From NCBI GenBank assembly GCA_964035545.1, contig OZ037770.1, forward strand, positions 4,682,662 to 4,746,661: a stretch of DNA of 64,000 nucleotides. The letters are read 5' to 3'. The stretch comes from Bugula neritina. Lineage: Eukaryota > Animalia > Bryozoa. The position numbers were made by a program, and so were the translations under genes. Each line of letters begins with the position of its first letter. Position 1 is the first letter of the stretch. Shown here one piece after another: positions 4,663-56,000 of the stretch. Below the pieces are notes generated by a model that had not been told where the DNA came from, did no database searches, and saw only the letters and a program-made list of their open reading frames with translations.

Positions 4663-7600
4663 ATGGCAACAGCTGGTGAGTGAATTTTAATACTATTTTA
4701 TTCACTTATTTCTTGGAAAGCAGAAATATTCAAACTCTGAAGATATGTTGATATTATGCGACCAGAATTTAATATAATATATCTATAAGACTATTTTATT
4801 ATTACTACTGTCTATAGTACTGTTTTATGTCACCAATTAGTGTATTACTTTGAAAGTAGTAGAATAGATAAAATTATGCAAGCTGTTGGGTTAGAGTTGT
4901 CTTATCTCAACACAGTAAACACTGAACTACAAACCATACATTAAATGATTATTTAGAAAGAATAATTATAAATCTATCTAATAAAATATTTGTTACTTTA
5001 GTCATTATTCTGATTACTGAAATCCACCATATAAGAAATATATTCAATCAGTAGATGATAGGTGTCAGAATGATAGACACTACCTGCTAGCACTGTGTAA
5101 TAATCACTGCACTGTCACTGTATTATGTTACAGAGAATATGATAATCTGGTTCAGACATTCTGGACAGCCTCCTGTAAGCTGGTCAGATGTAAGGAGAGC
5201 TGATACCAAGTTATATACTACTGCTGAGGTGAAACATGAAGTTGGGAGTTATTACATCACAGATCTCAAGCTGGAGAGAACAATTCCAAGTAACATTGGA
5301 GAAATTGCGGGTAAAGCCCTGTGTCTACATGTTTCTAACCTGACTGACAGAGCAAGTCTAGACAAGTGAGTGTCTATTAAAATAGCTGTGTAAATGTTAA
5401 ACAAGTTCATTTATTAAATAATGATAATACTGCTATTTATGATGATGGATAAAATATAATGGATAATATAATATAAAATATACCTGATTGAATACACCAC
5501 TATAGTATACAGAGTACATACTACTTTTTGTGTTATTTATTAAATAATAATGGATAATAGACACTGAAGCTGAAGCATATTTTTGCTCATAATATATTCA
5601 TACAGTATAATATAAATCAACATAGTAATATGTGCAACATTGTATGTAATCCAAATGAGCTTATAAAACTGCCTCTACTGCTACTTCATAATATATGCTG
5701 AATCTAAGCATGCTTTTGCTCATAATATATGCATACAACATAATATACATCAACATAGTAATATGTGCAACAATGTATGTAATTCAACTAAGCTTATAGT
5801 TGTATAGAAACTAGGAAGTGCAAAACTGCCTCTACTCGATATCACTGACTAAATCATGTTTTATGTATATATAGCTAAAAATATGAGTAATGCACAGTCT
5901 ATAATATATTATACAAAAGACTATGTTATGCCCGCAACTGCAACTGCAAATGTTATTCAATATATTAATTTACAGAGCATTGTAGAGTGAGGCCTTGTGT
6001 ACTATAAACTGACAGCTAAGCTTGCTAAATGAAGCTTCCTCTTCCTACCTACAACATAATATTATAAGTGAAACTTTTTGTGTTTTTGTGTTACCAATAA
6101 GTGCGTTTCTTGCATATTTTACTTAGTTAAATACACAAGTAGCATGATATAATAGTATATATTATTTTGATATGGTAGACATAAATACATGACACACTTT
6201 ATATTACAGTCTATGTAAGCTGACTCAGTTAGAGAAACTAGACATAGGATGGAATCATCTCGACACAGTACCAGAAGTTGTGTCATCACTCACTTCACTT
6301 AAAGAGTTGAATATGGAAAACTGTAAATTATCTACTCTACCTGAGAGGTTTGTGGAACGCAGTCTTTCTTGTTTCAAACACTCAATAATTCACATGTTGA
6401 TATTATGCTTACCAAGTATTGGGAATTAGTATGTCACTATGTATTGTTGAAAAGCATAAAGCTGTAAATCACATATTCCTTGAGGCTATATGATATTAGA
6501 GTTTCTCAAAACTTAAAAATAAATATGTTTCAGTTATCTGGCATTACATTTCCTACTGCTATAAAACCTTCTTTAACAATTACTATAGCACCCACTTGTA
6601 GTTTACTAAAATCTAGTTCATGTTAAATGCTTTTTAGCTTTTGCTATTTTACTTTGAATTTGCCTTGTTGCAATAAATTTATTTCTTGGATATTTTACCT
6701 GATTGAATACACAAGTATAGAATACACAGTATATAATAATATCCTGATACAGTGGAATATATATATTATGCAGTTTATATTACAGTCTATGTCAGCTGAC
6801 TCGGTTAGAAAAACTACACATGAGAGATAATCCTCTCAACACAGTACCAGAAGTTGTGTCATCACTGACATCACTTAAAGAGTTGAATATGTGGAACTGT
6901 GGTTTATCTACTCTACCTCAGAGGTTTGTGTGTCAAAATAGTTATTTGTTTTGTATTAAACATTCTATATTTCACTTCTTTAATGCTTCTCAAGTAGTGT
7001 TATGCTATGATATCATAAATTGCCAACGTATGTTGAAAAACATAAACATGTATTCTTTTAACTTATCTAGTTGTTTGTCCTAACGTGGAAATAATACAAT
7101 TTTATAGTGAGCCATTGTATATCCTTATATCACAGAACTTTTTGTGATCAAAAATAAAGCAGCCCTCTCCAGTTTACTGACAATCATGGTAATAATCGAA
7201 TCTTTCTTAGCTTCTTGCGTCAAGCACTTTGACTATCCATTACCGGAATGAATTTTTTTTCTGCATTTTTTACTTGGCTGACTGTGCTTAGCAATATAAT
7301 ATGTACAGTGTATATTATTATGACACAGGAGACTACATACATCATACCCTTTATAATTATTGCAGTCTATGCCAGCTGACTCAGTTAGAGAAACTAAACT
7401 TAGGAGGAAATCCTCTCAACACAGTACCAGAAGTTGTGTCATCACTCACATCACTTAAGGAGTTGGATATAAAGAGCTGTGAATTATCTACTCTACCTGA
7501 GAGGTTTGTGGAACACAGTCTTTCTTGTTTCAAACATTCAATAATTCACATGTTGATATAATGCTTACCAAGTATTGCTAATTAGTATGTCACTATGTAT

Positions 7601-10600
7601 AGTTGAAAAGCATAAAGCTATAAATTACAATTTTCTTGAGGCTATATTGTATTTGAGTTTCTCAAAACTTGAAAATAAATATGTTTCAGTTTTCTGGCAT
7701 TACATTTCCTATTGCCATAAAAAGTTCTTCAACAAATACTATAGCACCGCTTGTACTTTACTAGAATCTATTTCAGATTAAATGTCTTTTACTTTAAATA
7801 TGCCTTGTCAAAATAAATTTTTTTTGCATGTTATACCATATTGAATACACCACTGTAGTATACACAGTACATAATATTATCCTGATACAGTGGATTGCAT
7901 ATATTATGCACTTTATATTACAGTCTGTGTCAGCTGACTAAGTTAGAGAAACTAAACATAAAATTGAATCCTCTCAACACAGTACCAGAAGTTGTGTCAT
8001 CACTCACCTCACTTAAAGAGTTGAAGATGTGGAACTGTGGTTTATCTACTCTACCTCAGAGGTTTGTGTGTCAAAATAGTTATTTGTTTTGTATTAAACA
8101 TTCTATATTTCACTTCTTTATTGCTTCTCAAGTAGTGTTATGCTATGATATCATAAATTGCCAACGTATGTTGAAAAACATAAACATGTATTCTTTTAAC
8201 TTATCTAATAGTTTGTCCTAACGTGGAAATAATACAATTTTATAGTGAGCCATTGTATATCCTTATATCACAATACTTTTTGTAATCAAAAATAAAGCAG
8301 CCCTCTCCAGTTTACTGACAATCATGGTAATAATCGAATCTTTCTTAGCTTCTTGCGTCAAGCACTTTGACTATCCATTACCGGAATGAATTTCTTTTCT
8401 GCATTTTTTACCTGGTTGACTGTGCTTAGCAATATAATATGTACAGTGTATATTATTATGACACAGTAGACTACATATATCATACACTTTATAATTATTT
8501 ATTGCAGTCTATGCCAGCTGACTCAGTTAGAGAAACTATACATAGGAGGAAATCCTCTCAACACAGTACCAGAACTTGTGTCATCACTCACCTCACTTAG
8601 GGTGTTGAATATGGAGAGATGTAACTTATCTACTCTACCTGAGAGGTTTGTGTGCCACAATAAGTTTTATATATCACTTTTAACATTCAATAATTGTTAT
8701 TTTGAAGCAGAATTTCAACACAGTAAATACTACATTAAGATGTTTATACTTTTTCTCTGCAAACCTACATATGAATCTCACCGTTGCTGGGGATATTGTC
8801 AATTAGCACACTATCTAGAAGTTTCCTCTGCTTCACAAGTTCTTTCATAGTATTTCTATATCTTTTTGAATATCTCCCATGATAGGTTGACTGGGCTGTT
8901 TTTCAGAAATCGTTTTAATAACTATTTTTATTATATTATAGTTATAGCTACTTCTGTACACATAATTTGCATATATATTATATTATTATAGTAACACAGT
9001 TTCTTTTTACTGTCTAATTGAATGCACAAGTGCTATATACAGTATCTACATAATATTATCCTGATACAGTGAATTACATATATTATGCACTTTATGTTAC
9101 AGTCTATGTAAGCTGACTCAGTTAGAGAAACTAGACATAAGTGGAAATCCTCTCTACACAGTACCAGAAGTTGTGTCATCACTCACATCACTTAAGGAGT
9201 TAAATATGGAAAACTGTAAAATATCTACTCTACCTGAGAGGTTTGTGAAACAGTCCTTCTTGTTTCAAACACTCAATAATTCACATGTTTTTATAATGCT
9301 TACCAAGTATTGTTAATTAGTTTGACAATATGTAGTGTTGAAAAGCATAAAGCTATAAATTACAATTTTCTTGAGGCTATATGATATTAGAGTTTCTGAA
9401 CACTTGAAAATAAATATGTTTCAGTTATTAGGCATTACATTTCCTATTGCTCTATAACCTTCTTTAGATAATACTATAGCACCCACTTGTGGTTTACTAG
9501 AATCTATTCCCCATTACATGCTTATTAGCTTTCGGTAGTTTACTTTGAATTTGCTTTGTTGCAATAAATTTGTTTCTTGATTATTTTTCCTGATTGAATA
9601 CACAAGTATGGTATAATATACAGTATATAATAACATCCTGATACAGTGGATTACATATATTATGCACTTTATATTACAGTCTATGTCAGCTGACTGAGTT
9701 AGAGAGACTATACATAGGATCGAATCCTCTCAAAACAGTACCAGAAGTTGTGTCATCACTCACTTCACTTGAAGAGTTGGATGTGGGGAGATGTGAATTA
9801 TCTAATCTACCTGAGAGGTTTGTGTGTCACTACAAATTGTACATCATTTTTAACGTTCAATAATTATTATTTTGTAGCAGAATTTCAGCACAGTAAATAC
9901 TACATTAAGATGTTTATACTTTTTCTCTGCAAACCTCCATATGAATCTCACCTTTACAGAGGATATTGTCAATTAGCACACTATCTAGAAGATTCCCGAT
10001 GTCACAAATAAGTTTATAGTATTCCAATATCTTTTTTGAAATGCTTCCCATGAGAGGTTGACTAGGCTTTTCTTAAGAAATTGTTTTATCAAACCTTTTC
10101 ATTATATTATAATGATTGTTACTTTTGTACCCATAATTGGTATATATTGTAGTAATTTTAGTAATTACTAGTTTTGTGGGCTTCTAGCGAGCAATATCTT
10201 TATATTATCTTCCAATAACATCACGGCTTGTAACAGGAATGAATGATTTATTAATACGCAGTAAAAGTATTAGCCAAACGATACATCCAGTATCAAGGGT
10301 AAAAATATACATCTATCTTACACTAACTAGCTATCACACTCTGAGTATGGCTGCTATCTACATCCGGCGCCCTCCGCGCATCGCTGGGGGTCTCATGTGA
10401 CGGATATCGGATTGGCTGGGGAGCACGTGGGATAACATACTACACTCCCCACTACACTGCCCCCCACCACAGCAGGAAGCCCACCTTCCTGATAATGCCA
10501 AAATAAAAAAATAAAATAACAACAAAAAAACAATAAGATATCTGCATCACCAGATCAAAATTTATACTTAGGCCAACGGTTTATTAAAAAAAAACATCTG

Positions 10601-19600: not shown

Positions 19601-22600
19601 AATTGCAAAATTCGGCCCGTTGTGCCCCCGTTACCCCTACTTACAATTATACTGTTATATTATATATCTTTATAAAATACTTAAAATGTTATGAATCATA
19701 TATAATATGATACTCGTACATAATTGTAACTTAGACATACTTGTTTTCTTTCCTTAATTAATGTACTAAATCAAGGTATTGTATATAAACTTGTTATTGT
19801 AACTGCAACTTAGTACTATATTATGTGTAATTATTGTTATATTAATATTGGGTATCTTTATGAAAACTAATATATCAATTACCTGTATAGTTAAGTCTAA
19901 TAATAGAATTATTATATATTATTAGAATACAGAGATTAAAGAAGTTACAGGAACTCACAATTTCAGAGAATAACTTCACCAGTCTACCTTCTTCAGTATG
20001 TGCATTGAGTAATCTGCACACACTGGATATATCCAACAACAGATCCATGACGTCCTTGAACCCTGAGATACTACAGCTAACACATCTTGAGTCTTTCCGT
20101 ACACGTGAATGTGATGCTCTTACATCTCCTCCGCTAGAAATCTGTGTAAGTGGAGTGGATGCTGTGCGACAATACTACACAGACTTGGCTAAAGGTGCTG
20201 GTAGAAATCTTCCATTTGCTACAACAGTGGTGTTGGGGAACACCATGGCAGGTAAAACCAGTCTAATCAGAACATTACAGAGCACTGACAAGAAGAGAGT
20301 TCTGACTGACAGAAGTCCTAATGCAGAGTATGATGAGACCACAAAAGTGTTTAATGTGGAGAAGGTGGAGGTGGATGGTACAACTCTTCGTCTATTTGAT
20401 ATGGGAGGCCAAGAAGTTTACCATATCACATACCATTTAACACTGAGACAGAATTGTGTACCAGTCATTGTAGTCAACATGGAGCAGTATGATCAGATTT
20501 CGAAAATGTCTACAAACAGAGAGGCTGTGAGAAAGCTGGCTTTTGACTTCATGTCTCACCTCTATCTCGCTCATCCAACTCTTGGTCCGCCTAAGCTTGT
20601 CTTCACACACAAGGATAAGTTTCGGAGTGAAGTTTTCCACCAGCTTCGAAGAAAGTTTCTTGTAGTGTCCGAGCAGTTATGCAGAAATATTCTTGAAGAA
20701 GAGAAAAGTTTAGAAGGTGACTTTGCTCGAATTCAACATTTCACTAAATCAAATGGAAAAATCTTTGAAAATGAAAGCATCTATGAAGTTGGGAAATTTG
20801 ATGAGTACAAGATATTTGAATCGATTAGAAGATCTCTTCTTCAAAGTTGCCAACACTTTGTAAAGCCACTTCCAAAAGTCTGGGAGGATGCCAACAACAA
20901 CATTTTGTCCTTACAGACTCCACATAACACCTTTGATGAAGTATTGGCTGTGATAAACAAAAAGCAGGATAACATTGAAGCAAAGCAATTGGATACGATT
21001 ATCATGTACATGCATGATTGTGGCAAAGTTCTCTGGTATAAACATATTGATGCACTCAGGCCATACATATTTCACAAGATCACAGAAATAACCAAGCTAC
21101 TCTGTGTCTTGTATCATCATGATCCAGACATCTGGCAAAGGAGAGTTGATCAGTTCAAACCATATTGCTGCAGAGAAGGAGTGAGAATTGAAAAACAAGA
21201 TTTTGGAGAGTTTGTGAATTCCTTTAAAATAAATGGCTTGATGACGAAATCTCTTCTTGAATATTTGATCAGAAAAGAAACTTCGTTCACTGATGATAAT
21301 AATGTCGAAATTGCTGTTTGTTTGCTCAGAACATTCCGTTTATTGTATGGCCCTTTGAATAAGGATTCTGAAGATCCTTACTTTATAATCCCCCAGTTTG
21401 CCAAAGAATCCTACAGCCTCTCCTACACTCCACCAAAGGAGCTACTGCTTCATACCGACACACAGTTTAATGGTCTGGCATTACCGCTACATGTCTACCA
21501 TCAGATGACGGTTGGATTGCTAGAACTATTTGCTGACGATTCTGCCACAATACAAGTGAAAAGGAATGGAGCAAATGTATATCAAGATAAAATATACACA
21601 CAGCTGATACATGACTATGAATCCAGGAGAGTGTTGCTCTATACGTCATCTGGTGCTAATAATATTACCAAAGCGTGGGAAAAACTCATTTCAGTCAACA
21701 ACAACATCCTCAGACATGTTATGGAAATTTGGACTGCCAGTCGTCCAGTCACTGCCTGTATCTCTGCTCACTGCTTCCTGCTAGGTGTTCCATGTCCTAA
21801 AAAGTCTATTCATTCTAAATGGTGTTTTCGCTCCTTGAAGAAGCCTTCACCAGTTGTCAAGAAGTGCAGCGGATCTTCAACAATCTTGTGCAATAATGAG
21901 GAGATCCCAAGAGCTTTGATTTTCCCATGTATGTATCACTAATAGTGGTTATTACTATGTTTCTATAAATTGAAACTATTGCCTACTACATAAATAATTT
22001 TCATTACTACAAACTCTAAAAAAAACTTGCTAATTTTTTTTTAAATTTGAAAATATTTAAACCAAATACATTCTGTTCTGCGTAGATTTGTAACATTCTC
22101 GTAGTGGTTCTGCCGCAACTTATATTTTAGCTACCAAATACGTTGATTACGGTATACATAATAGGTGAGCTGGTCATAGTATATGTAGACTGGGTACATT
22201 TTACGTAATATGGAAGCTGGTTGTAGTACATGTAGACTGCACTGTTTTGTTCAGGTGAGGCATTGACTGAGACAGAAACCGATGAGCTGGTGAAGCTATT
22301 GACTCAACTTAAACTTCGTAAACAACAGAATGATGCAATCAGAATTGGTACATCTTTATAATACTCATTTTCTCAAAATCAGAGATCTACAATGTAGCAC
22401 TTTATTTACCTTGAATGGAAATTTTATAAGAAAATGCCTTTTTTCAGACAATCAATTAAAGTGCAACCTTGCAAACTTTTTCTTTTTCAATTTATCCTGG
22501 TATTAGCCAATCAAATCATGTGACTGCAGATGATGATGGTGATCTGAGTGATCTCTCTGATGATGATGACAATCTGTATCCTGATGAAGAGAATGAGGAA

Positions 22601-24971
22601 AACGTGAAGTTAATACAACCCAACCTAAAGACTACCAGAAACCTGAGGATTAAGAATCTATTCTCGAATGCTGAAAAGGTTGGTGTATCAGTTTAGGGTC
22701 ATAATTTTTGCCATTAAAGTATGCTCACTCAATTTATTAGATTTTTATGTTCATATTGTATAACGTATTCTTAGGCCAAACTTTATAAAAACATGCACCT
22801 GTAGCAAAATGACACTATTTACTGTTAGCTCTAATATTAGGCCATGTCTGCCTCAAACATGTTTAACTAGACGTACAAGTATGTTAACTATTACTATCAT
22901 TCATTACAGTGTTTAGTAATCTGTTCTAAGTATATTTTTATCCAGGTATTCAGTATGACAAGAAAGAGAGGAAGAGCTCTTATAATAAACAACAAGAACT
23001 TTGTTGAAAGACCAGACTTATGCAGGGAAGGATCAGATGCTGATGTTGAGAATATGTCTGCCATGTTGAAATCTCTCAAGTTTGATGTTGAGACACACAC
23101 AGACCTGACAGCAGAGGTATGTTGTTATGGTGGAAGTAATGCGAGCACTATTTAACCATCAAGTAGTTTTTCATATATAATGTCTTGTTTGTTCTTTAAC
23201 CAAATATTTTGTAAAGTTTGTAAAATATTTTACCAAAATATTTTTTTTTTACATTCACTGAATTATGTCTTTAATTGTACTTAAGAATTTTTCTAAAGCT
23301 ACATTGAAAATTTTGGGTCTTGTTAGTTTCTGCTCACTTTTTGGTCTTTTGTTAGGTTGATGAGAAAACTTTTTGCTCACATTGCATATAACTTTATAGC
23401 AATTATTTGACACTTTAAAATGAGGTAAATTTGTTTGACTGTTTAAATTCGTTTTCAAATTTGTAGGAAATGCTGTCTGCTGTGAAGTCTGAGGTGAAAA
23501 AGGGGAAACACAAAGAGTTTGGATGTCATATACTGGTTGTTATGACTCTTGGTAGAGAAGATAACTGTATCTATGGAACTGACCTCGAGAAGGTCAACCT
23601 CACTGACCTGTGTGATTTGCTCACTCCTTTGTATTTCGATGGAATAAGTAGAAAACCTAAGGTTGTCATACTAGAAGCCTGCAGTGGAGGTAGTTTGTAG
23701 TATAAATTTGAACTTTTAGTTCAATGGTTGAACTAGTAAATACTCCCTGTCAGAAACTAGTCATCTAATTAATTGGCGCTTCAACATGATTCATAGTTTG
23801 GATTGCTTGAGCAACTGGGTGTCTTGAGATTGTTTAGCTCACAATATTAAGGTCGTTGTTATGTATGTGTTACAGCAAACATTGAAGTAAGCCCAGACAG
23901 ATCTGGTCTTGCAGCAGATCAAGAAGAAGAAACTGAAGCTGCCTCTTCTACACCTTCTGAAGCTAATGAAGAAGACAATGATGAATATCCTGAACCGCCA
24001 AGAAAAAGAATTAGACCCATCAGACCAGTCTCACCACCAGAACCTAGAATAGAAGAGTGTAGAACTGTACGGGATATAGATGATCTTCTTGTTCTGAAGA
24101 GTAGCGTCTGCTGTAAGTATAGCAAGAGAAAGTTGTTCATTGGTTTGATAAATGTGCAGCTACAGTTTTTTTCAATCTAAAAGTCTGTTTCCTAAATTTA
24201 ATCTGACCATGCTATATGTAATCTTTTTCTTGTTCTTCGTAAATTGCGAGTTAATGTTCAAAATCAAACAGAATTTAGAAAATTTCAGGCTTGCTTTGTC
24301 TACACCATGCTTTGAGTTTCATTTAATTTTATTGCAGCATCAAAAAGACATCCTGAGTATGGATCTCCTATGATTAGAGCTCTAGTATCTTCAATCTACA
24401 AACATGCCTGTCATCGTGATCTCTACACCATCTTTCAGCAGGTGAGTTTAAAATGATAATTTTGTCAATTTCTACTTGTATATAGAATTATTTTTATGTT
24501 TAGCTGTGTGATAATTTACAATTTGCATGTCCAATGAATAAAATATAATGTAAATTAGGTAGCTTCTTAAAACGTGCTCGTATTTTTACTAATTTATATT
24601 TCTCCCACTGTGCCTGTTGTAAAGGTTAAAGCCCAACCTCAAGCTTTTCTTTAATATATTCTATAGTGGTAGCAGACAACTCTCAGGATCTACTTGCTTA
24701 GATTGAATATGAATAGGAAAGCCTAGTTTAGCAGCTGAGAGTTGTACCTTATCACAGCTATAAGTAGTTAGTTAGAACACAGTCTTACTAGTCATTACTT
24801 ACTCTACAGGTGGACACTAAACTAGTGAAGAAACTGTATACAGGTGAAGATTCAGAGAGAAGCAGAAATTTGGTTGCAATCTGGAATACTCTTCCATTCA
24901 GTAAAAGACTTTACCTTTTTCCTGGCTTCGATGGGTTTAATAGAGAGGACAACTCCTCACTCAGCACATAA
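4663..24971 (+). CDS. ROCO-caspase paralogue 1: LRR-Roc-COR-caspase-like fusion, ~1450 aa, caspase His lost
   Basis: Hand-spliced exons: 4663-4675 (GCCATGG Kozak), 5134-5365, seven 138-bp LRR exons, 19926-21928, 22255-22347, 22530-22678, 22946-23116, 23467-23689, 23876-24112, 24338-24441, 24810-24971 (TAA). All introns are GT-AG with compatible phases; total 4353 nt, open. Roc motifs GNTMAGKTSL / FDMGGQ / THKD; COR-type YMHDCGKVLWY; caspase RGRALIINN..REGSDAD, MTLG, EACSG, SKRHPEYGS, KRLYLFPG. Confidence 0.85.
6210..6347 (+). CDS. LRR cassette exon 1 of paralogue 1 (2x23-aa LRR)
   Basis: TTACAG|T...GAGAG|GTTTGT, 138 bp. LCKLTQLEKLDIGWNHLDTVPEVVSSLTSLKELNMENCKLSTLPE. Confidence 0.9.
6786..6923 (+). 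CDS. LRR cassette exon 2 of paralogue 1
   Basis: 138 bp, same splice signals. LCQLTRLEKLHMRDNPLNTVPEVVSSLTSLKELNMWNCGLSTLPQ. Confidence 0.9.
7366..7503 (+). CDS. LRR cassette exon 3 of paralogue 1
   Basis: 138 bp. LCQLTQLEKLNLGGNPLNTVPEVVSSLTSLKELDIKSCELSTLPE. Confidence 0.9.
7924..8061 (+). CDS. LRR cassette exon 4 of paralogue 1
   Basis: 138 bp. LCQLTKLEKLNIKLNPLNTVPEVVSSLTSLKELKMWNCGLSTLPQ. Confidence 0.9.
8508..8645 (+). CDS. LRR cassette exon 5 of paralogue 1
   Basis: 138 bp. LCQLTQLEKLYIGGNPLNTVPELVSSLTSLRVLNMERCNLSTLPE. Confidence 0.9.
9103..9240 (+). CDS. LRR cassette exon 6 of paralogue 1
   Basis: 138 bp. LCKLTQLEKLDISGNPLYTVPEVVSSLTSLKELNMENCKISTLPE. Confidence 0.9.
9680..9817 (+). 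CDS. LRR cassette exon 7 of paralogue 1
   Basis: 138 bp. LCQLTELERLYIGSNPLKTVPEVVSSLTSLEELDVGRCELSNLPE. Confidence 0.9.
10148..17322 (-). mobile_element. Ty3/Gypsy LTR retrotransposon (degenerate, intronic)
   Basis: Minus-strand gag remnant (16631-17290), protease LLDSGC, RT (WRFCVDYRKLN, PFGL, LYLDE), RNase H (DTDASD), integrase (zinc-binding H..H/CEIC, ERNNR, GPY), with frameshifts. 3' LTR 10148-10456 with TGTAGT..ACTACA ends and adjacent PPT GGTGGGGGGCAG. Only ~24 bp of the 5' LTR survives (17299-17322). Flanks resume the same intron type seen at ~8960-9000. Confidence 0.92.
11097..11918 (-). CDS. Extra retrotransposon ORF with C2H2-like zinc fingers
   Basis: 273-aa ORF between integrase and 3' LTR: CRLC-x12-HIHQH and CPCG..HQRTMECH, then a Pro-rich tail. 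A frameshifted coiled-coil continuation lies at 10844-11026. Confidence 0.55.
   Translation of the reverse strand: METGLTSVNSDLITPVESQLLETGLNEDITMADDLLDLELDTMFLSQSTRLNTVSQVPYKKMHDSQTSNSRLSSELCCKDQIRSNKNSALSDITRSSNYDDMPPLEMAWETEPTSATLPEILITRSSWVTQDIENIIQQDRGNDDCTTCRLCQQHFTTPRRLRVHIHQHFITTFCPCGEYSYHRDYTLRHQRTMECHVGHLYNVDKLSFITFLGLIKPFISDSARYERLSQEFPAPRAITQGPCPKPPGLKKLLVPRPKPPLTLRPVPTSYPE
18322..19637. mobile_element. Non-autonomous DNA transposon, 1.3 kb, TA-flanked
   Basis: Imperfect TIRs GGGTTAACGGGGCACAACGG and CCGTTGTGCCCCCGTTACCCC, with TA on both sides. Internal GGGCACAATGGGCC copies at ~18687, 18711 and 19441. Absent at the paralogous site (CCAAATATA|CTTATAATT, ~56800). Confidence 0.8.
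19926..21928 (+). CDS. Large exon of paralogue 1: last LRRs, Roc GTPase and COR
   Basis: Acceptor ATTAG|A at 19925/6 and donor T|GTATGT. 2003 bp, the same length as in paralogue 2. P-loop GNTMAGKT, G3 DMGGQ, G4 THKD; the pre-Roc motif LTSPPLEIC..G..AVRQY is typical of ROCO proteins. Confidence 0.92.
22946..24971 (+). CDS. Caspase-like domain exons of paralogue 1 (predicted catalytically impaired)
   Basis: p20 RGRALIINNKNF..CREGSDADV. The catalytic-His codon is CTT (Leu) at 23548-23550. EACSG at 23674-23688. p10 SKRHPEYGSPMIRAL..KHACH..KRLYLFPG resembles caspase-2/9-type C-termini. Confidence 0.85.
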
Positions 24972-34679: not shown

Positions 34680-35802
34680 TACTGGACAAGTCAAAATCTG
34701 AGTGCAAATTAAACTTGTTTTACAAAACAATGTTGTGAGAGAATCTAATGTCAGCTGTCAAGTGTGGTTACTGCAGAGTGTGTTGTACTGTGGACAGTAA
34801 ACTTCTAACACTCAGTTTGATTGGCTTAACAGGAATATCTGGTCAGTTACTTACAACAAACCAGCCACTGTGTAACATATTAATATAACACTGAAGTAAA
34901 GATTTACACTATAATCTGATTGGTATAGATATATCATTTGCCTACATCAGTGTTGGTATATTTAGCTTGCCTCCAAGGACTGCATTGTGCAAACAAATTT
35001 CTCATTGACCAATGGAGACAGTGCTATTGCAGGCACAAATTCATTCAAACAGTTCTATCAAATTAAATAAGGGCTTACACTATAATCTGATTGATATAAA
35101 AATACATTATTATTTGCATAAGCTTTTATATATGTCAGCATATTAAACCAACTGAGCAACTGGAAGTAGGAAAAGACAAACATCTGGTTGAATGAAAGCT
35201 AATGTTGTCACAAAATATTCCGCTAAAAATGTAAAATGAAACTGAAGTTGCATTTCATACTTTCACAACTTTCAGTCAAAAATTCAATTTGGTCAAATTA
35301 AACATTTTACCAAGTTGAATTGCATTGGAAAAGCCAGTTGCAAAAGTCTTCAATTGTGACAACCTAATTAGCCAATTTTAAAATAACACTTAAAAAAGAA
35401 GATAACTCCTTGTGGATGGTGATATTCAGTTATGACTTTAAAGACTAGATGACATATTTAAAGTATGTTTATAATTATATTGGCTACGCCTTTTATTATT
35501 ACTTTAAATTGCAATCAGCTTTACAAATTAACTACAGTCTCAAATGACTTCAAATAGCAATTAAGTCAGCCATATTTGACTGTTAGAAAGTGAGTTTCAG
35601 CAGCAATAAGATTTCAATGGGTTTCAATAATTTATTATAAAAGAGTACTCGCTCAAGTGAAATTGACTGAAACCGGCACTTTTTTCGAAATAAAAATAAA
35701 AATCAGCAACTAGTAGTTCGAGACATCAATGTAATTAATATTTCAGATGTCAAATCATGGTTATAGTAAAAGAGGGGTATCGTCACATTGGCAGTGAGAG
35801 GT

Positions 35803-37497: not shown

Positions 37498-37582
37498 GTT
37501 TATGCTGTTACAGAGCCCGGTACGGCAATGTGTGAACAAGGGGATAGTCTTCTTTGCCCCAATTTGTTCAGATAACCATAAT

Positions 37583-45124: not shown

Positions 45125-45632
45125 CACTAATATTCTACCTTACACTAATATTCTACCTTACACTAATGGTCTACTTTACACTAATACTCTACCTTACACT
45201 AATATTCTACCTTACACTAATATTCTACCTTACACTAATATTCTACCTTACACTAATATTCTACTTTGCACTGATAGTCTACCTTACACTAATAGTCTAC
45301 CTTACACTAATATTCTACCTTACACTAATATTCTACCTTACACTAATAGTCTACTTTACACTAATACTCTACCTTACACTAATATTCTACCTTACACTAA
45401 TATTCTAGCTTACACTAATAGTCTACATTGCACTAATGTTCTACCTTACACTAATACTCTACCTTACACTAATAGTCTACCTTACACTAATATTCTACCT
45501 TACACTAATGTTTTACCTTACACTAATAGTCTACCTTACACTAATATTCTAGCTTACACTAATAGTCTACCTTGCACTAATGTTCTACCTTACACTAATA
45601 GTCTAGCTTACACTAATAGTCTAGATTACACT
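45125..45632. repeat. 18-bp minisatellite (CACTAATATTCTACCTTA)n
   Basis: About 28 tandem units, giving the spurious YLTLIF ORF. Window positions 1-21 match its terminal unit, so a copy probably also precedes paralogue 1. Confidence 0.95.
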
Positions 45633-47007: not shown

Positions 47008-50000
47008 ATGGCAACAGCTGGTGAGTGAATTTAAATACTATTTTATACACTTATTTCTTGGAAAGTAGAAATGTTTAAACTCTGAAGATATGTTGATAAT
47101 ATGCCACCGCAATATAATACATCTATAAAACTATTTGATTATCACTACTCTCTATAGCACTGTTTTATGTCACCAATTAGCGTATTGCTTTGAGAATAGT
47201 AGAATAGATAATATTATGCAAGCAGTTGGGTTAGAGTTGTCTTATCTCAACACAATAAACACTGAACTATAAACCATACATTAATTGATTATTTAGAAAG
47301 AATATAAAGCTATCCGATAAAATATATGTTATGTTAGTCATTTTTATGATTACTGAAATCCACCATAATATATGACAGGTGTCAGAACGACATACATCAT
47401 CGGCTAGCACTGTGTAATAATCACACTGTCACTGTATGATGTTACAGAGAAGATGAGAATTTGGTTCAGACATTCTGGACAGCCTCCTGTAGACTGGTTA
47501 GATGTACTGTGTGCTGATACCAAGTCATATACTACTGCTGAGGTAAAACGTGAAGTTGGGAGTTACGATATCACAGATCTCCAACTGGAGAGAACAATTC
47601 CAAGTAACATTGGAGAGATTGCTGGTAAAGCCCTGTGTCTACATGTTTCTAACCTGACTGACGGAGCAAGTCTAGACAAGTGAGTGTCTATTAAAATAAT
47701 AGTGCAAATGTTAAACAAGTTCATTTGTGTTATTTATTAAATGATAATTGATAATATGTGGTGCTGAAGCATGTTTTTGCTCATAATATATTCATACAAT
47801 ATAATATACATAAAAATTAGAACATGTGCAACATTGCATGTAATCCAAATGAGCTTATAGCTGCAATAGCTAGGGAGTGTAAAACTGCCTGTACTGTTAT
47901 TCGATGTCATAGACTAAATCATATTTTATGTAAATATAGCTAAAATATGAGTAATGTACAGAATATGATATATTATACAAAAGACTATCTTATGTCATCA
48001 ACTGCAAATATACAATATGAAACATTACTTAATATATTAACTTACATAGCAATTTAGACTGAGGCCTTATGTACTATAAACTCACAGCTAACTTTGCAAA
48101 ATGAAGCTTCCTCTCCTCACCTACAACATAATATAACTGAAACTCTTTGCTGTTTTTGCAACAATGTATCTGTTTTCTGCATGTTTTTTTCGGTTAAATA
48201 CACAAGTAGCATGATATAATAGCATATATTATTTTAATATGGTAGACATAAATACATGACACACTTTATATTACAGTGTGTGTCAGCTGACTCAGTTAGA
48301 GAAACTAGACATAGGATGGAATCCTCTCAACACAGTACCAGAAGTTGTGTCATCACTTACATCACTCAAAGAGCTGGTTATGTGGAGCTGTGGTTTATCT
48401 ACTCTACCTGAGAGGTTTGTGTTTCACAATATTTCTTCTGTTTCAAACATCCAATATTGCACATCTTTAATGCTTCTCAAGTAGTGGTATGCTATGTTAT
48501 CATAATATATTGCCAACATATGTTAAAAACATAAGTATAAGCATTTTTTGAACTTATCTAATAGTTTGTCCTAACTTGGAAATAATACAGTTTTATGGTA
48601 TGCCATTGTATATTCTTATATCACAATTATTTTTTTAATTATAATAATAAAAGAGCCATCTGTAGTTTACTTGCGATCATGGAAATAACTGAATGCTTCT
48701 TAGCTTCTTGTCTTATTGACTTTGACTATCCATTACCAAAATGAATCTGTATTTTGCATGTTTTACCTGGTTGAGTGCACCAAATGAATATAATCTATAC
48801 AATATATATTATTATGATACAGTAGACTATATATATCCTATTTTTTATGATTATTACAGTCTATGATAATGAATAATATATGCTGAAGCTGAAGCATATT
48901 TTTGCTCATAATATATTCATACAATATAATATACATCAACATAGTAATATGTGCAACATTGTATGTAATCTAAATGAGATTATAGTTGTAGAAACTAGAG
49001 AAGCTGCCTCTACTGTTACTTGACAGTGTTGATTAAATCATGTTTTATGTATATATAGCTAAAAACTGAAGTAGTGTACAGTTTACAATATATTATACAA
49101 AAGACTATGTTATGTCATCAACTGCAAATGTACAATCTTAAACATTAGTTAATATATTAATTTACATAGCAATTTAGAGTGAGGCCTCATGTACTATAAA
49201 CTAACAGCTAACCTTGCATAATGAAGTTTCCTCTCCTCACCTACAACATAATATAACTGAAACTCTTTGCTGTTTTTTGCAACAATATATCTGTTTCCTG
49301 CATCTTTTATGTTGAATACACAAGTAGTCCGATATAATGGTATATATTATTTTGATATATGGTAGGCATAAATACATGACACACTTTATATCATGTTACA
49401 AAACCTAAATATGCATATTTTTTGAAGTTATCTAATAGCTTGTCCTAACGTGTAAATAATACAGTTTAATGGCATGCCATTGTATATCCTTATATCACAG
49501 AACTTTTGATAATCAATAATAAAACAGCCATCTGCGGTTTACTGGCAATCATGGTAATAATCGAATCTTTCTTAGCTTCTTGCATCAATCACTTTGATTA
49601 TCCATTACCGCAATGAATTTGTTTTCTGCATTTTTTACCTGGTGGACCGTGCTTAGCAATATTATATGACGTAACATGAACCTCCCCAACTCTGACAAAA
49701 TAAGACCAGCTAAAGCCACCTTTAATTCTGAGATGAATAAAAATGATTATATGTATAGATACAACACCCGGGAAAATAAAGCATCTACATTTTGTACACC
49801 AGACCTATCTCCTGAAGAGCGTGACCGTGACTATAAACTTAGAAAACTGAGGGACGAATTAAAAGCAACTCACTCAGACAAAATGTTTCAAGTAAGAAGT
49901 TTGCCCATGACTCTGATACTATTGCTTCAGAATCTCTCTGGGACCCCAGCAAGACTAACACCACAACTGATAAAAACACAGCTGGACATTAAATATATAC

Positions 50001-53000: not shown

Positions 53001-56000
53001 AAAGGAGCCAAAGCGCTCCGAGTGAGATTAATTAGATGAGATGAGATGAGATGAGATGAGATGACGTTCCATTGCTGGAATTATTGTGTTTTCTGCACTT
53101 TTACCTGGCTGACTGTGCTTAAGCAATATAGTCTATACAGTGTATAGTATTATCACACAGTAGACTACATATATCTCACCCTTTATGATTATACAGTCTA
53201 TGTCAGCTGACTCAGTTAGAGAACCTATACATAGCAGGGAATCCTTTCAACACAGTACCAAAAGTTGTGTCATCACTCACATCACTTGAGGAGTTGGATA
53301 TGAGGATCTGTAAATTATCTGCTCTACCTGAGAGGTTTGTGGAGTCTTTTATTATTTCGATCATTCAATAATTCACATTTTGATATAATGCTTACCAAGT
53401 ATTGCTAAATAGTGTATCCTTATGTACCGTTAAAAAGCATAAAGCTATAAATTGTAATTTGCTTGAGATTTTATTATATTATAGTTTCTAGAAACTTGAA
53501 AATAAACATGTTTTAATCATTTGGCATTACATACTCTAATGGTATAAACCTTGGTTAACAAATAATGTAAACTATCAGCCCTGGTTTGTAAACAGGCTCA
53601 TTGTGGTCTTCAGTCTCTACTGATGTTTTATTGGTAAAACTGTCGTGAAAACTACAATTAATGAAATAGTGAATATGCCATAATGAATGATAATATGTGA
53701 TAAAACTTTCATCAGTGATAATTTGACACTAACTAATAAGCTTCAAGTAAAGAACAAGTCTTGCTATAAAAATCAATATACACCATCTAAATTATTAAAA
53801 TTGATATTAAAAAAGATAATACAAATGCCATAAATGATTGTCAAAAATACTACAATAACAATAATTACCTTGTTAGACCATCCGGGAATGAAGCTTATAA
53901 CTTTGATGTTAATGCAGTAGGTATTTATTCTCTACTTTGATAATATTGATTTAAATGGAACAAAATATTTAACATAACAAGTGAAAAGTTACTCAGCAGG
54001 TTATGCTACATGTTAGCTGACTGAAAGTGTAGCATAGAATGAGAGCTGAGAGTAAAATATTCTTTAATGAATTAATCATTTCAGGAAGCTGATGGTGTAA
54101 AAAACTATTTATATAACTTAGTCATAGTAAAATTATACACATGAGGAAATCATGTTGACTGTCGTGTGCAAAATTGTCACAGCCATAAAAGCAAAACAGC
54201 TACATATACATGACTAAGCAATGGTTTTTCTAATTATAGGCACGTTGGTTAACTTTGTTTGTTTTGATGAGAGCAAGAAATTTTACTGGCATTCCAATTA
54301 ATTACAAATAATATATAGCACCAACTTCTAGTTTACTAGAATCTATTTCAATCATTCAATAATTCACATTTTGATATAATGCTTACCAAGTATTGCTAAA
54401 TAGTGTATCATTGTGTACCATTTAAAAGCATAAAGCTATAAATTGTAACTTTGCTTGAGATTATATTAAAGTTTTACGAAACTTGAAAATAAACATGTGT
54501 TAATCATTTGGCATTATATACTCTAACGGTATAAACCTTCCTTAACAAATAATATAGCACCCACTTGTAGTTTACTATAGTATCTATTTCCCATTAAATG
54601 CTTATTAGCTTTCTGTATTTCACTTTGAATACGCATTGTCAGAATAAATTTGTTTCTTGGATATTTTACCTGATTGGATATACAAGTAGTATAATATACA
54701 GTATATATTATTATCCTGATACAGTGGATTACATATATTATGTACCTTTTATTACAGTTTATGTGAGCTGACTCAGTTAGAGAAACTACACATAGCAGGG
54801 AATCCTCTCAACACAGTACCAGAAGTTGTGTCATCACTCACATCACTTGAAGAGTTAGATATGAGAATGTGTGAATTATCTAATCTACCTGAGAGGTTTG
54901 TGGAGTATTTAATTGTTTCAAGCATTCAATAATTCACTATTTGATATAATGCTTACCAAGTATTGCTAAATCGTCTATCATTATGTACAGTTAAAATGTA
55001 TAAAGCTATAAATTGTAATTTGCTTGAGAATATATTGTATTAAAAATTCACGAAACTTGAAAATAACCATGTTTTAATCATTTGGCATTACATACTCTAA
55101 TGCGGTATAAACCTTGGTTAACAAATAATATAGCACCCACTTGTACTTTACTAGTATCTATTTCCCATTAATAGTTTATTAGCTTTCTGTATTTTACTTT
55201 GAATACGCATTGTCAGAATAAATTTGTTTCTTGGATATTTCACCTGATTGGATATACAAGTAGTATAATATACAGTATATAATATTATCCTGATAGAGTT
55301 TATTACATATATTATGTACCTTTTATTACAGTCTATGTCAGCTGACTCAGTTAGAGAAACTAGACATAGAAGGGAATCCTCTCAACACAGTACCAGAAGT
55401 TGTGTCATCACTCACATCACTTAAAGAGTTGAATATGCAGAGCTGTGAAATATCTACTCTACCTGAGAGGTTTGTGTGTCACAATAAGTTTTATATATCA
55501 CTTTTAACATTCAATAACTATTATTTCATAGCCATATTTCAACACAGTAAATACTACATTAAGATGCAAACCTACATATGAATCTCACCGTTTCTGGGGA
55601 TATTGTCAATTAACACACTATAATCTATAGAAGTTTCCTCGACTTCACAAATTATTTTATAGTATTTCAATATCTTTTTTGAAATGCTTACCATGATAGG
55701 TTGACTAGGCTTTTTTTCAGAAATCGTTTTAATAACTCTTTTCAATATATTTTAACTATAGCCACTTTTGTACACAAAATTAGTTTTTATTATTTTATTA
55801 TAATAACATATTATCTCATTATTTTCAAATTAGTCAGAAAACCACTTCCTTATATTTTTAATGACATCATGTATGACATACTTGACTCAATCAACTGTAT
55901 TGTGTAAGGCTCATTAGTAACAATGCACAGTGGATTATAATATGGTATGTTTTACTTGAATAATTCAAGTTTGAGGTACAATTATTTCGACATGAAAGAT

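What the first reader, a model, noticed from the sequence alone, without database searches (positions are those of the whole stretch)
6210..9817. Array of frame-symmetric 138-bp LRR cassette exons with hypervariable concave-face residues
Seen: 7 exons here and 4 in paralogue 2, all exactly 138 bp and phase 2-2, each encoding two 23-aa LRRs. The framework (LCQLTQLEKL..NPLNTVPEVVSSLTSL.EL..C.LSTLPE) is nearly invariant even at the DNA level. Variation concentrates in the x positions of LxxLxLxxN/C. Repeat 1: DIGW, HMRD, NLGG, NIKL, YIGG, DISG, YIGS, DIGW, YIAG, HIAG, DIEG. Repeat 2: NMEN, NMWN, DIKS, KMWN, NMER, NMEN, DVGR, VMWS, DMRI, DMRM, NMQS. Known: these positions form the ligand-binding beta-sheet surface diversified in lamprey VLRs and plant NLRs, and exon-per-repeat LRR shuffling is described for brown-algal (Ectocarpus) ROCO genes. 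Inference: diversifying selection on a pathogen or non-self recognition surface, reached convergently in an animal.
Basis: partly seen in the sequence, partly recalled or inferred. Interest (0 to 1): 0.9.

Follow-up and report, generated by a model that had tools for sequence, protein, structure and literature searches.

The report
Hypervariable LRR exon cassettes, ROCO-caspase gene
Seven near-identical 138-base exons build the sensor arm of a moss-animal (bryozoan) gene that joins leucine-rich repeats, a GTP switch and a cell-death protease, and only the codons on the predicted binding face are being diversified, as in fast-evolving immune receptors.

Summary

They are the sensor arm of two tandem paralogues of an LRR-Roc-COR-caspase (ROCO) gene. 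The genome is probably Bugula neritina. It holds at least 134 such Roc-COR exons and at least 349 candidate cassettes.

In 162 cassettes, variation sits at seven codons: 11, 13, 14, 34, 36, 37 and 39. These are LRR motif positions 5, 7, 8 and 10. Their dN is about 4.6 times the divergence of the neighbouring introns. A site model gives omega of about 7, with posterior 1.0 at exactly those seven codons. Codons 11 and 34 use all four bases at the first position while the synonymous third position is fixed. The scaffold has omega of about 0.5 and looks homogenised.

Part of the excess comes from exchange of exons or patches between cassettes. Three of the seven codons also have fast synonymous change.

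Diversifying selection is supported. The ligand (pathogen or non-self) and any somatic mixing of cassettes are untested.

This is an animal, caspase-ended counterpart of the brown-algal LRR-ROCO exon-shuffling system. The scan has already noted and followed up this family on at least eight other stretches of the same genome, with the same reading.

The parts
5133..5365 (+). First coding exon of paralogue 1 (ATG at 5139; 75 codons plus 2 bases; phase-2 donor). It has no signal-peptide-like hydrophobic stretch.
   Evidence: ORF. Acceptor and donor read. The RNA-labelled run X5 has GT..AG joints starting at 5365. Maximum Kyte-Doolittle 15-residue mean is 0.87. No Pfam family.
6210..6347 (+). Cassette exon 1 (quartets DIGW / NMEN)
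   Evidence: Pfam LRR_4 and LRR_1
6786..6923 (+). Cassette exon 2 (HMRD / NMWN)
7366..7503 (+). Cassette exon 3 (NLGG / DIKS)
   Evidence: X5 joint from about 6347 to 7366
7924..8061 (+). Cassette exon 4 (NIKL / KMWN)
   Evidence: X5 joint 5365 to 7924
8508..8645 (+). Cassette exon 5 (YIGG / NMER)
   Evidence: X5 joint 5365 to 8508
9103..9240 (+). Cassette exon 6 (DISG / NMEN)
9680..9817 (+). Cassette exon 7 (YIGS / DVGR)
   Evidence: positional homologue of L001:7958 with flank p = 0.018 and 2 exon differences
19926..21928 (+). Large exon of paralogue 1: last LRRs and cap, Roc GTPase, COR, and a Cys/His-rich tail. The acceptor at 19926 completes the split AGN codon. The donor near 21928 is inferred only; the frame is open to 21942.
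   Evidence: Pfam Roc 33.6 bits against a cut-off of 27. phmmer hits to C. tepidum and M. barkeri Roco structures. AlphaFold model pLDDT 88.3. Foldseek best matches are LRRK1, C. tepidum LRR-Roc-COR 6hlu, Roc-COR 3dpu and COR 3dpt. Boundaries.
23467..23689 (+). Caspase (peptidase C14) large-subunit exon of paralogue 1. The catalytic His position reads Leu (TLG where paralogue 2 has THG), and the Cys pentapeptide reads EACSG.
   Evidence: Pfam Peptidase_C14 25.9 bits against a cut-off of 21.4; translations compared; boundaries read (inferred).
47453..47679 (+). First coding exon of paralogue 2. Its end is inferred by analogy with paralogue 1.
   Evidence: ORF; 90% DNA repeat with 5101-5400 (D13)
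48277..48414 (+). Paralogue 2 cassette 1 (DIGW / VMWS)
53197..53334 (+). Paralogue 2 cassette 2 (YIAG / DMRI)
54758..54895 (+). Paralogue 2 cassette 3 (HIAG / DMRM)
55332..55469 (+). Paralogue 2 cassette 4 (DIEG / NMQS)
57099..59101 (+). Paralogue 2 LRR-cap/Roc/COR exon (donor inferred)
   Evidence: Pfam Roc 33.3 bits. 80% amino-acid identity to paralogue 1, dS 0.49, dN 0.11, omega 0.22.
61700..61930 (+). Paralogue 2 caspase exon with THG and QACSG intact (ORF coordinates)
   Evidence: Pfam Peptidase_C14 27.2 bits

Best explanation
The stretch is the germline-encoded sensor arm of a cytosolic LRR-Roc-COR-caspase (ROCO) protein of a bryozoan, probably Bugula neritina.

SHOWN. The arm is an array of tandemly duplicated exon-plus-intron units. 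Every exon is 138 bp and phase 2-2, so gain, loss or swap of a unit never breaks the frame. Paralogues carry from 4 to at least 17 units. Each exon encodes two LRRs whose scaffold is conserved (omega about 0.5). The scaffold's synonymous divergence between the two window genes (0.12) is four times lower than in their Roc-COR exons (0.49). Motif positions 5, 7, 8 and 10 turn over 4-12 times faster than the flanking introns, with omega of about 7. The seven sites give 141 distinct combinations in 153 unique cassettes. The same design, with its own scaffold, is found in other clusters of the genome (more than 130 genes in all) and, as 141-bp exons, in the bryozoan Watersipora.

INFERRED. Variety is made in the germline by point substitution under diversifying selection, plus unequal crossing-over and short-tract exchange between cassettes. 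The variable residues line the concave beta-sheet and bind diverse ligands, most likely pathogen-derived. Ligand binding changes the Roc-COR GTPase/dimerisation state and brings the fused caspase domains together, which triggers proteolysis and cell death. This would be a one-chain sensor-switch-executioner, analogous to NLR inflammasomes and to bacterial LRR-GTPase conflict systems with caspase effectors.
For: Anatomy: exons, phase; LRR, Roc, caspase Pfam hits; Roc-COR by sequence and by fold, pLDDT 88, matches LRRK1, CtRoco and the COR domain.
Family size: 349 cassette candidates; 134 Roc-COR candidates; 68 scored, 66 of them open.
Hypervariability: (entropy).
Selection:
- 78 independent flank-matched pairs give intron d 0.083, framework dS 0.077, framework dN 0.041 and HV dN 0.38. 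In the 21 youngest pairs, intron d is 0.0106 and HV dN is 0.1245.
- codon 11 is NAC in 134 of 153 cassettes, with first base G48/A41/T32/C13 and third base C in 134 of 134. Codon 34 is NAT with third base T140/C1. Column diversity is 0.56 at HV first positions against 0.09 at framework third positions.
- binomial P = 0.0037 to 2.5e-5 for the shortage of synonymous changes at codons 11 and 34.
- M1a against M2a gives 2dlnL = 553 and omega2 = 7.35, with posterior 1.0 at exactly codons 11, 13, 14, 34, 36, 37 and 39.
- the nonsynonymous rate is 4.5-15 times the exon-average neutral rate at all seven sites, and it exceeds the synonymous rate significantly at codons 11, 37, 39 and 34.
- against the collinear array in L001, the window array shows intron 3.07%, framework 3.4% and HV codons 12.7% (Fisher P = 5e-6).
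Scaffold homogenisation.
General design: other clusters; Watersipora 141-bp phase 2-2 cassettes; Watersipora LRR-Roc-COR-caspase proteins of about 1400 residues; amphioxus has the same architecture; a brachiopod has a CARD instead of the caspase.
Surface: strands cover motif positions 3-7; canonical LRR solenoid: SHOC2, internalin A, CtRoco LRR.
Transcription and splicing at family level: (exon-only depth and GT..AG joints in X5).
Cytosolic location.
Analogy: PMC3341825, PMC11378527, PMC8195603.
Against: - There are no functional, challenge or ligand data; the immune role is an inference from architecture and evolutionary pattern.
- Tree-based tests assume no recombination, which is clearly violated here, and the codon models are my own implementation, not codeml or HyPhy.
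- Three of the seven sites (13, 14, 36) do not show nonsynonymous rate above synonymous rate because their synonymous rate is also high.
- NG86 omega within the HV codons is only about 2 overall and 1.2-1.9 in the window alone.
- A count of distinct codon states gave no nonsynonymous excess.
- Motif positions 2 and 3 of the concave face are conserved.
- Paralogue 1 carries a 6-kb retroelement in its last LRR intron, and its caspase lacks the catalytic His, so this particular copy may not be an executioner.
- The RNA evidence comes from short contigs of a run whose RNA nature is a guess, and they cross-map among paralogues.
- The window's own spliced array was not folded; a Watersipora homologue stood in.
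Confidence: 0.6

Rival explanations
1. Concerted evolution plus exchange only. The scaffold is homogenised by gene conversion and unequal crossing-over, and the variable codons are merely tolerated (relaxed) positions whose old variants are shuffled between cassettes. On this view no adaptive diversifying selection is needed.
For: Pairs with 100% identical 380-bp flanks differ by 6-20 exon bases, in a bimodal pattern. Framework dS between the two window genes (0.12) is far below their Roc-COR dS (0.49). The synonymous rate is also high at codons 13, 14 and 36. The codon-state count shows no nonsynonymous excess.
Against: Relaxation cannot push dN above the neutral rate, yet HV dN is 4-12 times intron divergence. 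At codons 11 and 34 the first base is saturated while the adjacent synonymous third base is invariant in 134/134 and 140/141 codons; neutral or merely shuffled old variants would carry synonymous differences too. The nonsynonymous rate significantly exceeds the synonymous rate at codons 11, 34, 37 and 39. The same motif positions vary in other subfamilies with different DNA and in Watersipora.
Confidence: 0.08
2. The variable surface tracks polymorphic partners of the animal itself (allorecognition between colonies, or paralogue-specific endogenous clients in developmental or metamorphic apoptosis) rather than pathogens.
For: Bryozoans are colonial animals, named in PMC8195603 among the colonial animals that show allo-incompatibility, and no bryozoan allorecognition locus surfaced in the papers read here. 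There is a large clustered family with variable copy number. The human ROCO relatives act as scaffolds with endogenous partners (established knowledge of LRRK2 and MFHAS1; SHOC2 is among the best LRR fold matches).
Against: The protein has no signal peptide or transmembrane-like segment in its N-terminal exon, whereas known invertebrate allorecognition determinants are cell-surface or secreted (established knowledge of Hydractinia Alr and Botryllus FuHC). More than 130 paralogues with 141 surface combinations in 153 cassettes fit a broad recognition repertoire better than one or a few allotype loci.
Confidence: 0.17
3. Somatic diversification. Individual cells mix the frame-neutral cassettes by alternative splicing (DSCAM-like, as reported for Ectocarpus ROCO genes) or by DNA rearrangement or conversion (VLR-like).
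For: Every cassette is phase 2-2, so any subset splices in frame. X5 contigs join exon 5365 to cassettes 4 and 5, and cassette 1 to cassette 3, with GT..AG ends. Alternative splicing of LRR exons is reported for brown-algal ROCO genes (PMC11378527).
Against: The joints come from contigs of about 100-230 bases laid at 90% likeness or more in a family of at least 349 near-identical cassettes, so they can equally be normal neighbour joints of paralogues. The germline genes are complete and spliceable, unlike VLR loci. No somatic DNA comparison was possible.
Confidence: 0.08
4. Assembly artefact: the arrays are mis-assembled or mis-expanded repeats, or uncollapsed haplotypes, so some 'paralogue' differences are allelic.
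For: L001 and L004 lie 310 kb apart and share stretches with identical flanks. The repeats are about 580 bp long and highly similar.
Against: The cassettes occur in runs from two independent studies, 2016 and 2023. There are 162 intact in-frame exons without a single stop. The same design is seen in an independent genome of another bryozoan genus. Even if some copies were allelic, the hypervariability would stand.
Confidence: 0.03

Closest known systems
Brown-algal (Ectocarpus, Saccharina) LRR-ROCO genes with shuffled LRR exons (Zambounis et al. 2012, PMC3341825; Teng et al. 2024, PMC11378527)
   Same: Both have N-terminal LRRs followed by Roc-COR. The LRRs are encoded by equal-length, frame-neutral repeated exons, the genes are clustered and vary in repeat number, and positively selected sites lie on the concave face. 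Both are proposed as immune receptors.
   Different: The algal genes have one LRR per 72-bp exon and no caspase. Here there are two LRRs per exon (138 bp; 141 or 144 bp in other subfamilies), phase 2-2 with a split AGN codon, in an animal, with a C-terminal caspase and a family of more than 130 genes. The origin is very probably independent.
Metazoan ROCO proteins (MFHAS1/MASL1, LRRK1/2, DAPK1); NCBI names the Watersipora homologues 'MFHAS1 homolog'
   Same: The LRR-Roc-COR core is shared. The fold of the window's large exon matches LRRK1, LRRK2 and C. tepidum Roco.
   Different: MFHAS1 has no caspase, and LRRK and DAPK carry kinases. None is known to have hypervariable cassette-exon LRRs or such an expansion. 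Orthology to MFHAS1 was not tested.
Bacterial 'AP-GTPase' (Roco-type) conflict systems with rapidly evolving N-terminal LRRs and variable C-terminal effectors, including caspase (Kaur et al. 2021, PMC8195603)
   Same: The order of parts is the same, LRR sensor, Roc-COR switch, effector, and a caspase is among the effectors.
   Different: Those are prokaryotic single-ORF genes, and their diversity does not come from intron-bounded cassettes. No direct homology of the caspase part was tested.
Lamprey and hagfish variable lymphocyte receptors
   Same: An LRR solenoid with an invariant scaffold and hypervariable concave-face positions, built from modular cassettes.
   Different: VLRs are assembled somatically from flanking cassettes into an incomplete germline gene and are secreted or GPI-anchored. 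Here the genes are complete in the germline, spliced conventionally and cytosolic, and no somatic process is shown.
NLR receptors (animal NACHT-LRR, plant NB-ARC-LRR) and inflammasome/apoptosome caspase activation
   Same: A sensor-LRR, NTPase switch and death effector logic, diversifying selection on xxLxLxx residues, and clustered, fast birth-and-death families.
   Different: The switch here is a Roc GTPase with COR, not a STAND ATPase. The LRRs are N-terminal, and the caspase is fused rather than recruited through CARD or death domains.

Membership tests
ROCO proteins | Roc (Ras of complex proteins) GTPase domain | tested here: met
   Pfam PF08477 scores 33.6 and 33.3 bits against a cut-off of 27. 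The P-loop G-x4-GKT, DxxG and THKD motifs are visible in the translation. phmmer matches C. tepidum and M. barkeri Roco structures at E = 6e-7 to 5e-6.
ROCO proteins | COR domain directly following Roc in the same chain | tested here: met
   Pfam COR-A reaches only 24 bits against a cut-off of 35.3, so the sequence evidence is sub-threshold. The AlphaFold model (pLDDT 88.3) matches Roc-COR 3dpu, LRR-Roc-COR 6hlu, COR alone 3dpt (TM by target 0.64-0.67), LRRK1 and LRRK2.
MFHAS1 (MASL1) orthologue | LRR-Roc-COR with no further enzymatic domain; one-to-one orthology with the vertebrate gene | tested here: not met
   The gene continues into a caspase domain and belongs to a lineage-specific expansion of at least 134 copies. 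The name comes from automatic annotation of Watersipora proteins. No orthology tree was built.
Caspases (peptidase C14) | C14 fold or profile match | tested here: met
   Pfam PF00656 scores 25.9 and 27.2 bits against a cut-off of 21.4.
Caspases (peptidase C14) | Catalytic His (SHG-type motif) and Cys (QACxG) | tested here: inconclusive
   Paralogue 2 has THG and QACSG. Paralogue 1 has TLG and EACSG, so the His is lost. Only the large-subunit exon was examined, and activity was not assayed.
Canonical LRR solenoid | Tandem LxxLxLxxN/CxL motifs with a period of 20-30 residues that form a parallel beta-sheet on the concave side | tested here: met
   Pfam LRR_4, LRR_1 and LRR_8 on a single cassette. 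The period is 23. The model of a homologous Watersipora array has strands every 23-24 residues covering motif positions 3-7. Fold matches include SHOC2, Leptospira LRR proteins, internalin A and CtRoco LRR.
Brown-algal type LRR-ROCO exon-shuffling system | Equal-length, frame-neutral LRR exons that vary in number and are exchanged | tested here: met
   All 162 cassettes are 138 bp and phase 2-2. Arrays have 4 to at least 17 units. There is a one-unit indel relative to the collinear array in L001. Exon and intron histories are discordant. The design differs in having two LRRs per exon rather than one.
Brown-algal type LRR-ROCO exon-shuffling system | Positive selection on concave-face residues | tested here: met
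Brown-algal type LRR-ROCO exon-shuffling system | Alternative splicing of LRR exons | tested here: inconclusive
   X5 joints skip cassettes, but the short contigs cross-map among paralogues.
VLR-like somatic assembly | Incomplete germline gene completed somatically from donor cassettes | tested here: not met
   The germline genes are complete: a start exon, spliceable cassettes with AG/GT, then Roc-COR and caspase exons. Somatic DNA was not compared.
NLR (STAND NTPase-LRR) | NACHT or NB-ARC ATPase | tested here: not met
   No NACHT or NB-ARC hit; the NTPase is Roc.

The most novel reading that the evidence does not exclude
The frame-neutral cassettes are combined differently in different cells or zooids, by regulated exon choice or by somatic exchange between arrays. 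That would give a colonial invertebrate an individually variable repertoire of cytosolic LRR-GTPase-caspase receptors that serves immunity or colony self/non-self discrimination.
Probability: 0.1. Interest if true: 0.92.

Novelty: new variant of a known kind. Interest (0 to 1): 0.68.

Why it matters
If the reading holds, bryozoans carry a very large family of one-chain receptors of a kind not described in animals in the papers I could search. The family has at least 134 Roc-COR exons in a 216-Mb genome. Each protein has a hypervariable LRR surface, a Roc-COR GTP switch and a fused caspase.

Three consequences follow:
- It would be an independent animal re-invention of the exon-cassette LRR-ROCO design known from brown algae, and of the sensor-switch-caspase logic known from bacterial conflict systems and NLR inflammasomes.
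- It would give the poorly understood ROCO family, which includes LRRK2 and MFHAS1, a natural system in which ligand sensing by the LRR arm can be linked to a simple read-out, caspase activation.
- It offers candidate genes for immunity, and possibly allorecognition, in a phylum where neither is understood at the molecular level.

Tried and rejected
1. A count of distinct codon states per site (minimum spanning tree) gave a normalised N/S of 0.48 at HV sites and 0.54 in the framework. It counts each state once and ignores recurrence and frequency, so it does not measure rate. I report it as a non-supporting result.
2. Half-exon swapping, suggested by two other readers' notes: pairs sharing only the upstream or only the downstream intron type show only a weak matching bias of the LRR1 or LRR2 patch (0.407 against 0.444, and 0.407 against 0.355). 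It was neither confirmed nor excluded.
3. DGR-like adenine mutagenesis by the nearby retroelement was considered because codons 11 and 34 are NAY. I rejected it. Only the first base varies and the second A is kept. The element is an ordinary Ty3/gypsy-type insertion on the other strand. The same sites vary in more than 150 cassettes elsewhere.
4. Site-specific hypermutation is unlikely. Synonymous change at codons 11 and 34 (pS 0.034 and 0.074) is no higher than in introns (0.078).
5. Laying reads to detect exon skipping or allelic variants did not work. Only contigs were available and they cross-map among paralogues, so no claim is made.
6. One fuzzy-regex scan timed out and was replaced by a Hamming scan.

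Full report
OBSERVATION.
The stretch 6210-9817 holds seven exons, and paralogue 2 holds four more. Coordinates are under 'parts'. Each is exactly 138 bp, preceded by AG and followed by GT, and open in a single frame laid out as 1 base + 45 codons + 2 bases. The intron therefore splits an AGN codon after its second base on both sides, which is phase 2-2. Each exon gives 46 residues, or two 23-residue LRRs. Pfam finds LRR_4, LRR_1 and LRR_8 on a single cassette. A Hamming scan with the 41-base invariant core finds exactly these 11 copies in the window. The introns are repeated as well, in a few types, so the unit of duplication is exon plus intron.

WHAT THE GENE IS.
- Upstream, a first coding exon (ATG at 5139, donor at 5365, phase 2) encodes 75 residues with no hydrophobic signal-like stretch and no Pfam family.
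- Downstream of the last cassette, a roughly 2-kb exon (from 19926) encodes the last LRRs, a Roc GTPase and COR. The evidence: Pfam Roc is above its cut-off and COR-A below it. phmmer matches the C. tepidum and M. barkeri Roco structures. An AlphaFold model from 39 homologues has pLDDT 88.3, and its best fold matches are LRRK1, C. tepidum LRR-Roc-COR, Roc-COR, COR alone and LRRK2.
- Further on is a caspase (C14) exon.
- Paralogue 2 (47.4-62 kb) repeats the plan with four cassettes.
- Full-length annotated homologues in the bryozoan Watersipora subatra (1413-1419 residues, automatically named 'MFHAS1 homolog') have the same LRR-Roc-COR-caspase order. Amphioxus also has LRR-Roc-COR-caspase proteins, and a brachiopod has LRR-Roc-COR-CARD.
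- The genome is 216,009,554 bases. That matches the 216.00 Mb reported for Bugula neritina (PMC11480708, abstract). Partial holders of the stretch include 'symbiont metagenome' runs. The species name is an inference.

FAMILY.
The cassette has at least 349 first-look candidates in the genome, mostly on contig C6 between 2.5 and 6.3 Mb. The Roc-COR exon has at least 134 candidates; 68 were scored, all but two near full length, and 66 have no stop. They lie on seven contigs. I fetched 20 loci and found 162 cassettes in the window plus those loci. All are 138 bp and none has a stop codon; 161 have a GT donor and one has GC. Arrays range from 4 to at least 17 units. More distant clusters on C1, C5, C8, C4 and distal C6 use two-LRR cassettes with a different scaffold, but the same motif positions vary. 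In Watersipora the cassettes are 141 bp, with one extra codon in LRR1, the same phase 2-2 and the same split AG|A codon. The design is therefore older than the split of these two bryozoan lineages.

WHERE THE VARIATION IS.
Across 162 cassettes, amino-acid entropy exceeds 2 bits only at codons 11, 13, 14, 34, 36, 37 and 39. Every other codon is at or below 1.1 bits. In the motif L1-x-x-L4-x-L6-x-x-N/C9-x-L11 these are positions 5, 7 and 8 of LRR1 and 5, 7, 8 and 10 of LRR2, offset by exactly 23 codons. Positions 2 and 3 are conserved. The seven sites give 141 distinct combinations in 153 unique cassettes, with only weak association between sites.

SELECTION TESTS.
(a) Pairs matched by flanks. 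I matched cassettes by their flanking introns alone (190 + 192 bases, splice sites removed) into 78 independent pairs.
- Intron distance is 0.083.
- Framework dS is 0.077 and dN is 0.041 (omega 0.54).
- Over the seven HV codons, dN is 0.38 and dS is 0.19.
- In the 21 youngest pairs, intron distance is 0.0106 and HV dN is 0.1245.

(b) Direct reading of the columns.
- Codon 11 is NAC in 134 of 153 unique cassettes. Its first base is G48/A41/T32/C13 and its third base is C in all 134.
- Codon 34 is NAT, with third base T140/C1.
- Mean column diversity is 0.56 at HV first positions, 0.37 at HV second positions and 0.09 at framework third positions.
- Synonymous change at these two codons is no faster than in introns, so a local mutational hot spot is unlikely.
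- The shortage of synonymous differences has binomial P between 0.0037 and 2.5e-5.

(c) My own GY94/F3x4 likelihood code on a FastTree tree.
- M0 gives omega = 1.42 for the whole exon.
- M1a has lnL -5075.6 and M2a has lnL -4799.2, so 2dlnL = 553.
- Omega2 is 7.35, with posterior 1.0 at exactly the seven codons.
- With site-specific synonymous and nonsynonymous rates, the nonsynonymous rate is 4.5-15 at all seven sites (framework medians 0.75 and 0.5).
- The nonsynonymous rate significantly exceeds the synonymous rate at codons 11, 37, 39 and 34. It does not at 13, 14 and 36, where the synonymous rate is also high.

(d) A window-specific test. I aligned the window array 6700-10000 to its collinear array in L001.
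- Introns differ at 3.07% (76 of 2473).
- Framework codons differ at 3.4%.
- HV codons differ at 12.7% (16 of 126; Fisher P = 5e-6).
- The two arrays differ by one cassette unit.

(e) Contrast with the signalling core. The Roc-COR exons of the two window paralogues have dS 0.49, dN 0.11 and omega 0.22.

CAVEATS ON MECHANISM.
The excess at HV codons does not come from point substitution alone.
- Pairs whose 380-bp flanks are identical or 99% identical either have 0-2 exon differences or have 6-20. In the second group the framework differences are as many as between random cassettes. Whole exons or patches have therefore been exchanged relative to their introns, or the introns have been homogenised around protected exons.
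- Framework synonymous distance between the two window genes' cassettes (0.12) is four times lower than in their Roc-COR exons (0.49). Family-wide framework third-position distance (0.09) is well below typical intron-flank distance (mode 0.2-0.3). The scaffold evolves in concert.
- Recombination violates the single-tree assumption of test (c). Tests (a), (b) and (d) do not depend on a tree.
- The codon-state count gave no nonsynonymous excess and is not a rate measure.

SURFACE.
Instead I folded an annotated Watersipora cassette array (P0023:98-375). pLDDT is about 80 over the five cassettes. DSSP strands recur every 23-24 residues and cover motif positions 3-7, so positions 5 and 7 alternate with the core leucines and point the same way; position 8 follows directly. 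The model matches canonical LRR solenoids at about 2.2 Å rmsd over 190 columns, among them SHOC2, Leptospira LRR proteins, internalin A and the C. tepidum Roco LRR. That the exposed strand residues form the concave ligand-binding face is established knowledge for LRR proteins. No coordinates were available to measure co-faciality directly.

EXPRESSION.
One run labelled metagenomic RNA-Seq (X5, RNA by guess) has depth on the exons and almost none on the introns, whereas the DNA runs cover both. It also has GT..AG joints at exactly the predicted boundaries: 5365 to 7924, 5365 to 8508, and about 6347 to 7366. The records are short contigs laid at 90% likeness or more in a large family. They show family-level splicing at these sites, and nothing about exon skipping in this particular gene.

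COMPARISON AND NOVELTY.
- The closest described system is the LRR-ROCO family of brown algae. It has 72-bp one-LRR exons, exon shuffling, positive selection on the concave face and alternative splicing (PMC3341825, PMC11378527).
- Bacterial Roco-type GTPases with fast-evolving LRRs and caspase effectors are described as conflict systems (PMC8195603).
- Five literature searches found no description of the bryozoan family or of cassette-exon LRRs in an animal ROCO gene. The library is incomplete.
- I therefore class it as a new variant of a known kind.
- The scan itself has noted and followed up the same family on at least eight other stretches of this genome, with concordant readings. My tests were run independently, before I read those notes.

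VERDICT.
Diversifying selection on the predicted binding face is supported, with exchange between cassettes as a second source of variety. The identity of the ligand, the immune role and any somatic mixing remain untested.

Noticed in passing
window 10800-17050, minus strand: A GC-rich (about 54% against 31% background) Ty3/gypsy-type LTR retroelement sits in the intron between the last cassette and the Roc-COR exon of paralogue 1. Its aspartic protease/RT, RNase H, integrase zinc-finger and Tf2-type SH3 pieces lie in separate ORFs, so its reading frame is interrupted.
   Followed up: partly
window 49676-52758, plus strand: ORFs of a non-LTR-type element carrying reverse transcriptase are inserted inside the cassette array of paralogue 2, between cassettes 1 and 2. 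Repeats of cassette-intron sequence without an exon lie at 48.5-49.7 kb (families D6, D9, D11), which suggests that one or more cassettes were lost there.
   Followed up: partly
window 23467-23689 against 61700-61930: The caspase exon of paralogue 1 has Leu in place of the catalytic His (TLG against THG) and EACSG in place of QACSG. Paralogue 2 keeps both. This makes a pseudo-caspase next to an apparently intact copy, also noted by another reader (s1-453731).
   Followed up: partly
window 21700-21928 (end of the large exon); alignment A1: After COR there is a conserved Cys/His cluster: W558, C587, H589 and C590 are invariant or nearly so, and C629 and C642 are nearly invariant across 39 homologues. 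The model shows small beta elements here. It may be a zinc-binding module between COR and the acidic linker.
   Followed up: no
window 35650-37500 and 45017-45736: Two long minisatellites lie between the paralogues. One has a 14-bp unit (more than 100 copies, strongly G-rich strand, GC skew 0.59) and the other an 18-bp unit (about 40 copies).
   Followed up: no
L011 (G000:C6:5032001-5042000): A very recent higher-order amplification: a block of three or four cassettes repeats about four times with near-identical flanks (flank p 0.000-0.03) and 0-4 exon differences. This is exon-array expansion caught in progress.
   Followed up: partly
L001 (C6:4543-4553 kb) against L004 (C6:4853-4863 kb): Cassettes 310 kb apart share 100% identical 380-bp intron flanks yet differ at 6 exon bases, 5 of them in the LRR1 hypervariable codons. 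This is either a patch conversion or very fast substitution after a segmental duplication. The possibility of uncollapsed haplotypes was not excluded.
   Followed up: partly
window 29445-29754, minus strand: Short ORFs between the two ROCO paralogues look like exons of an unrelated enzyme gene. Not examined.
   Followed up: no
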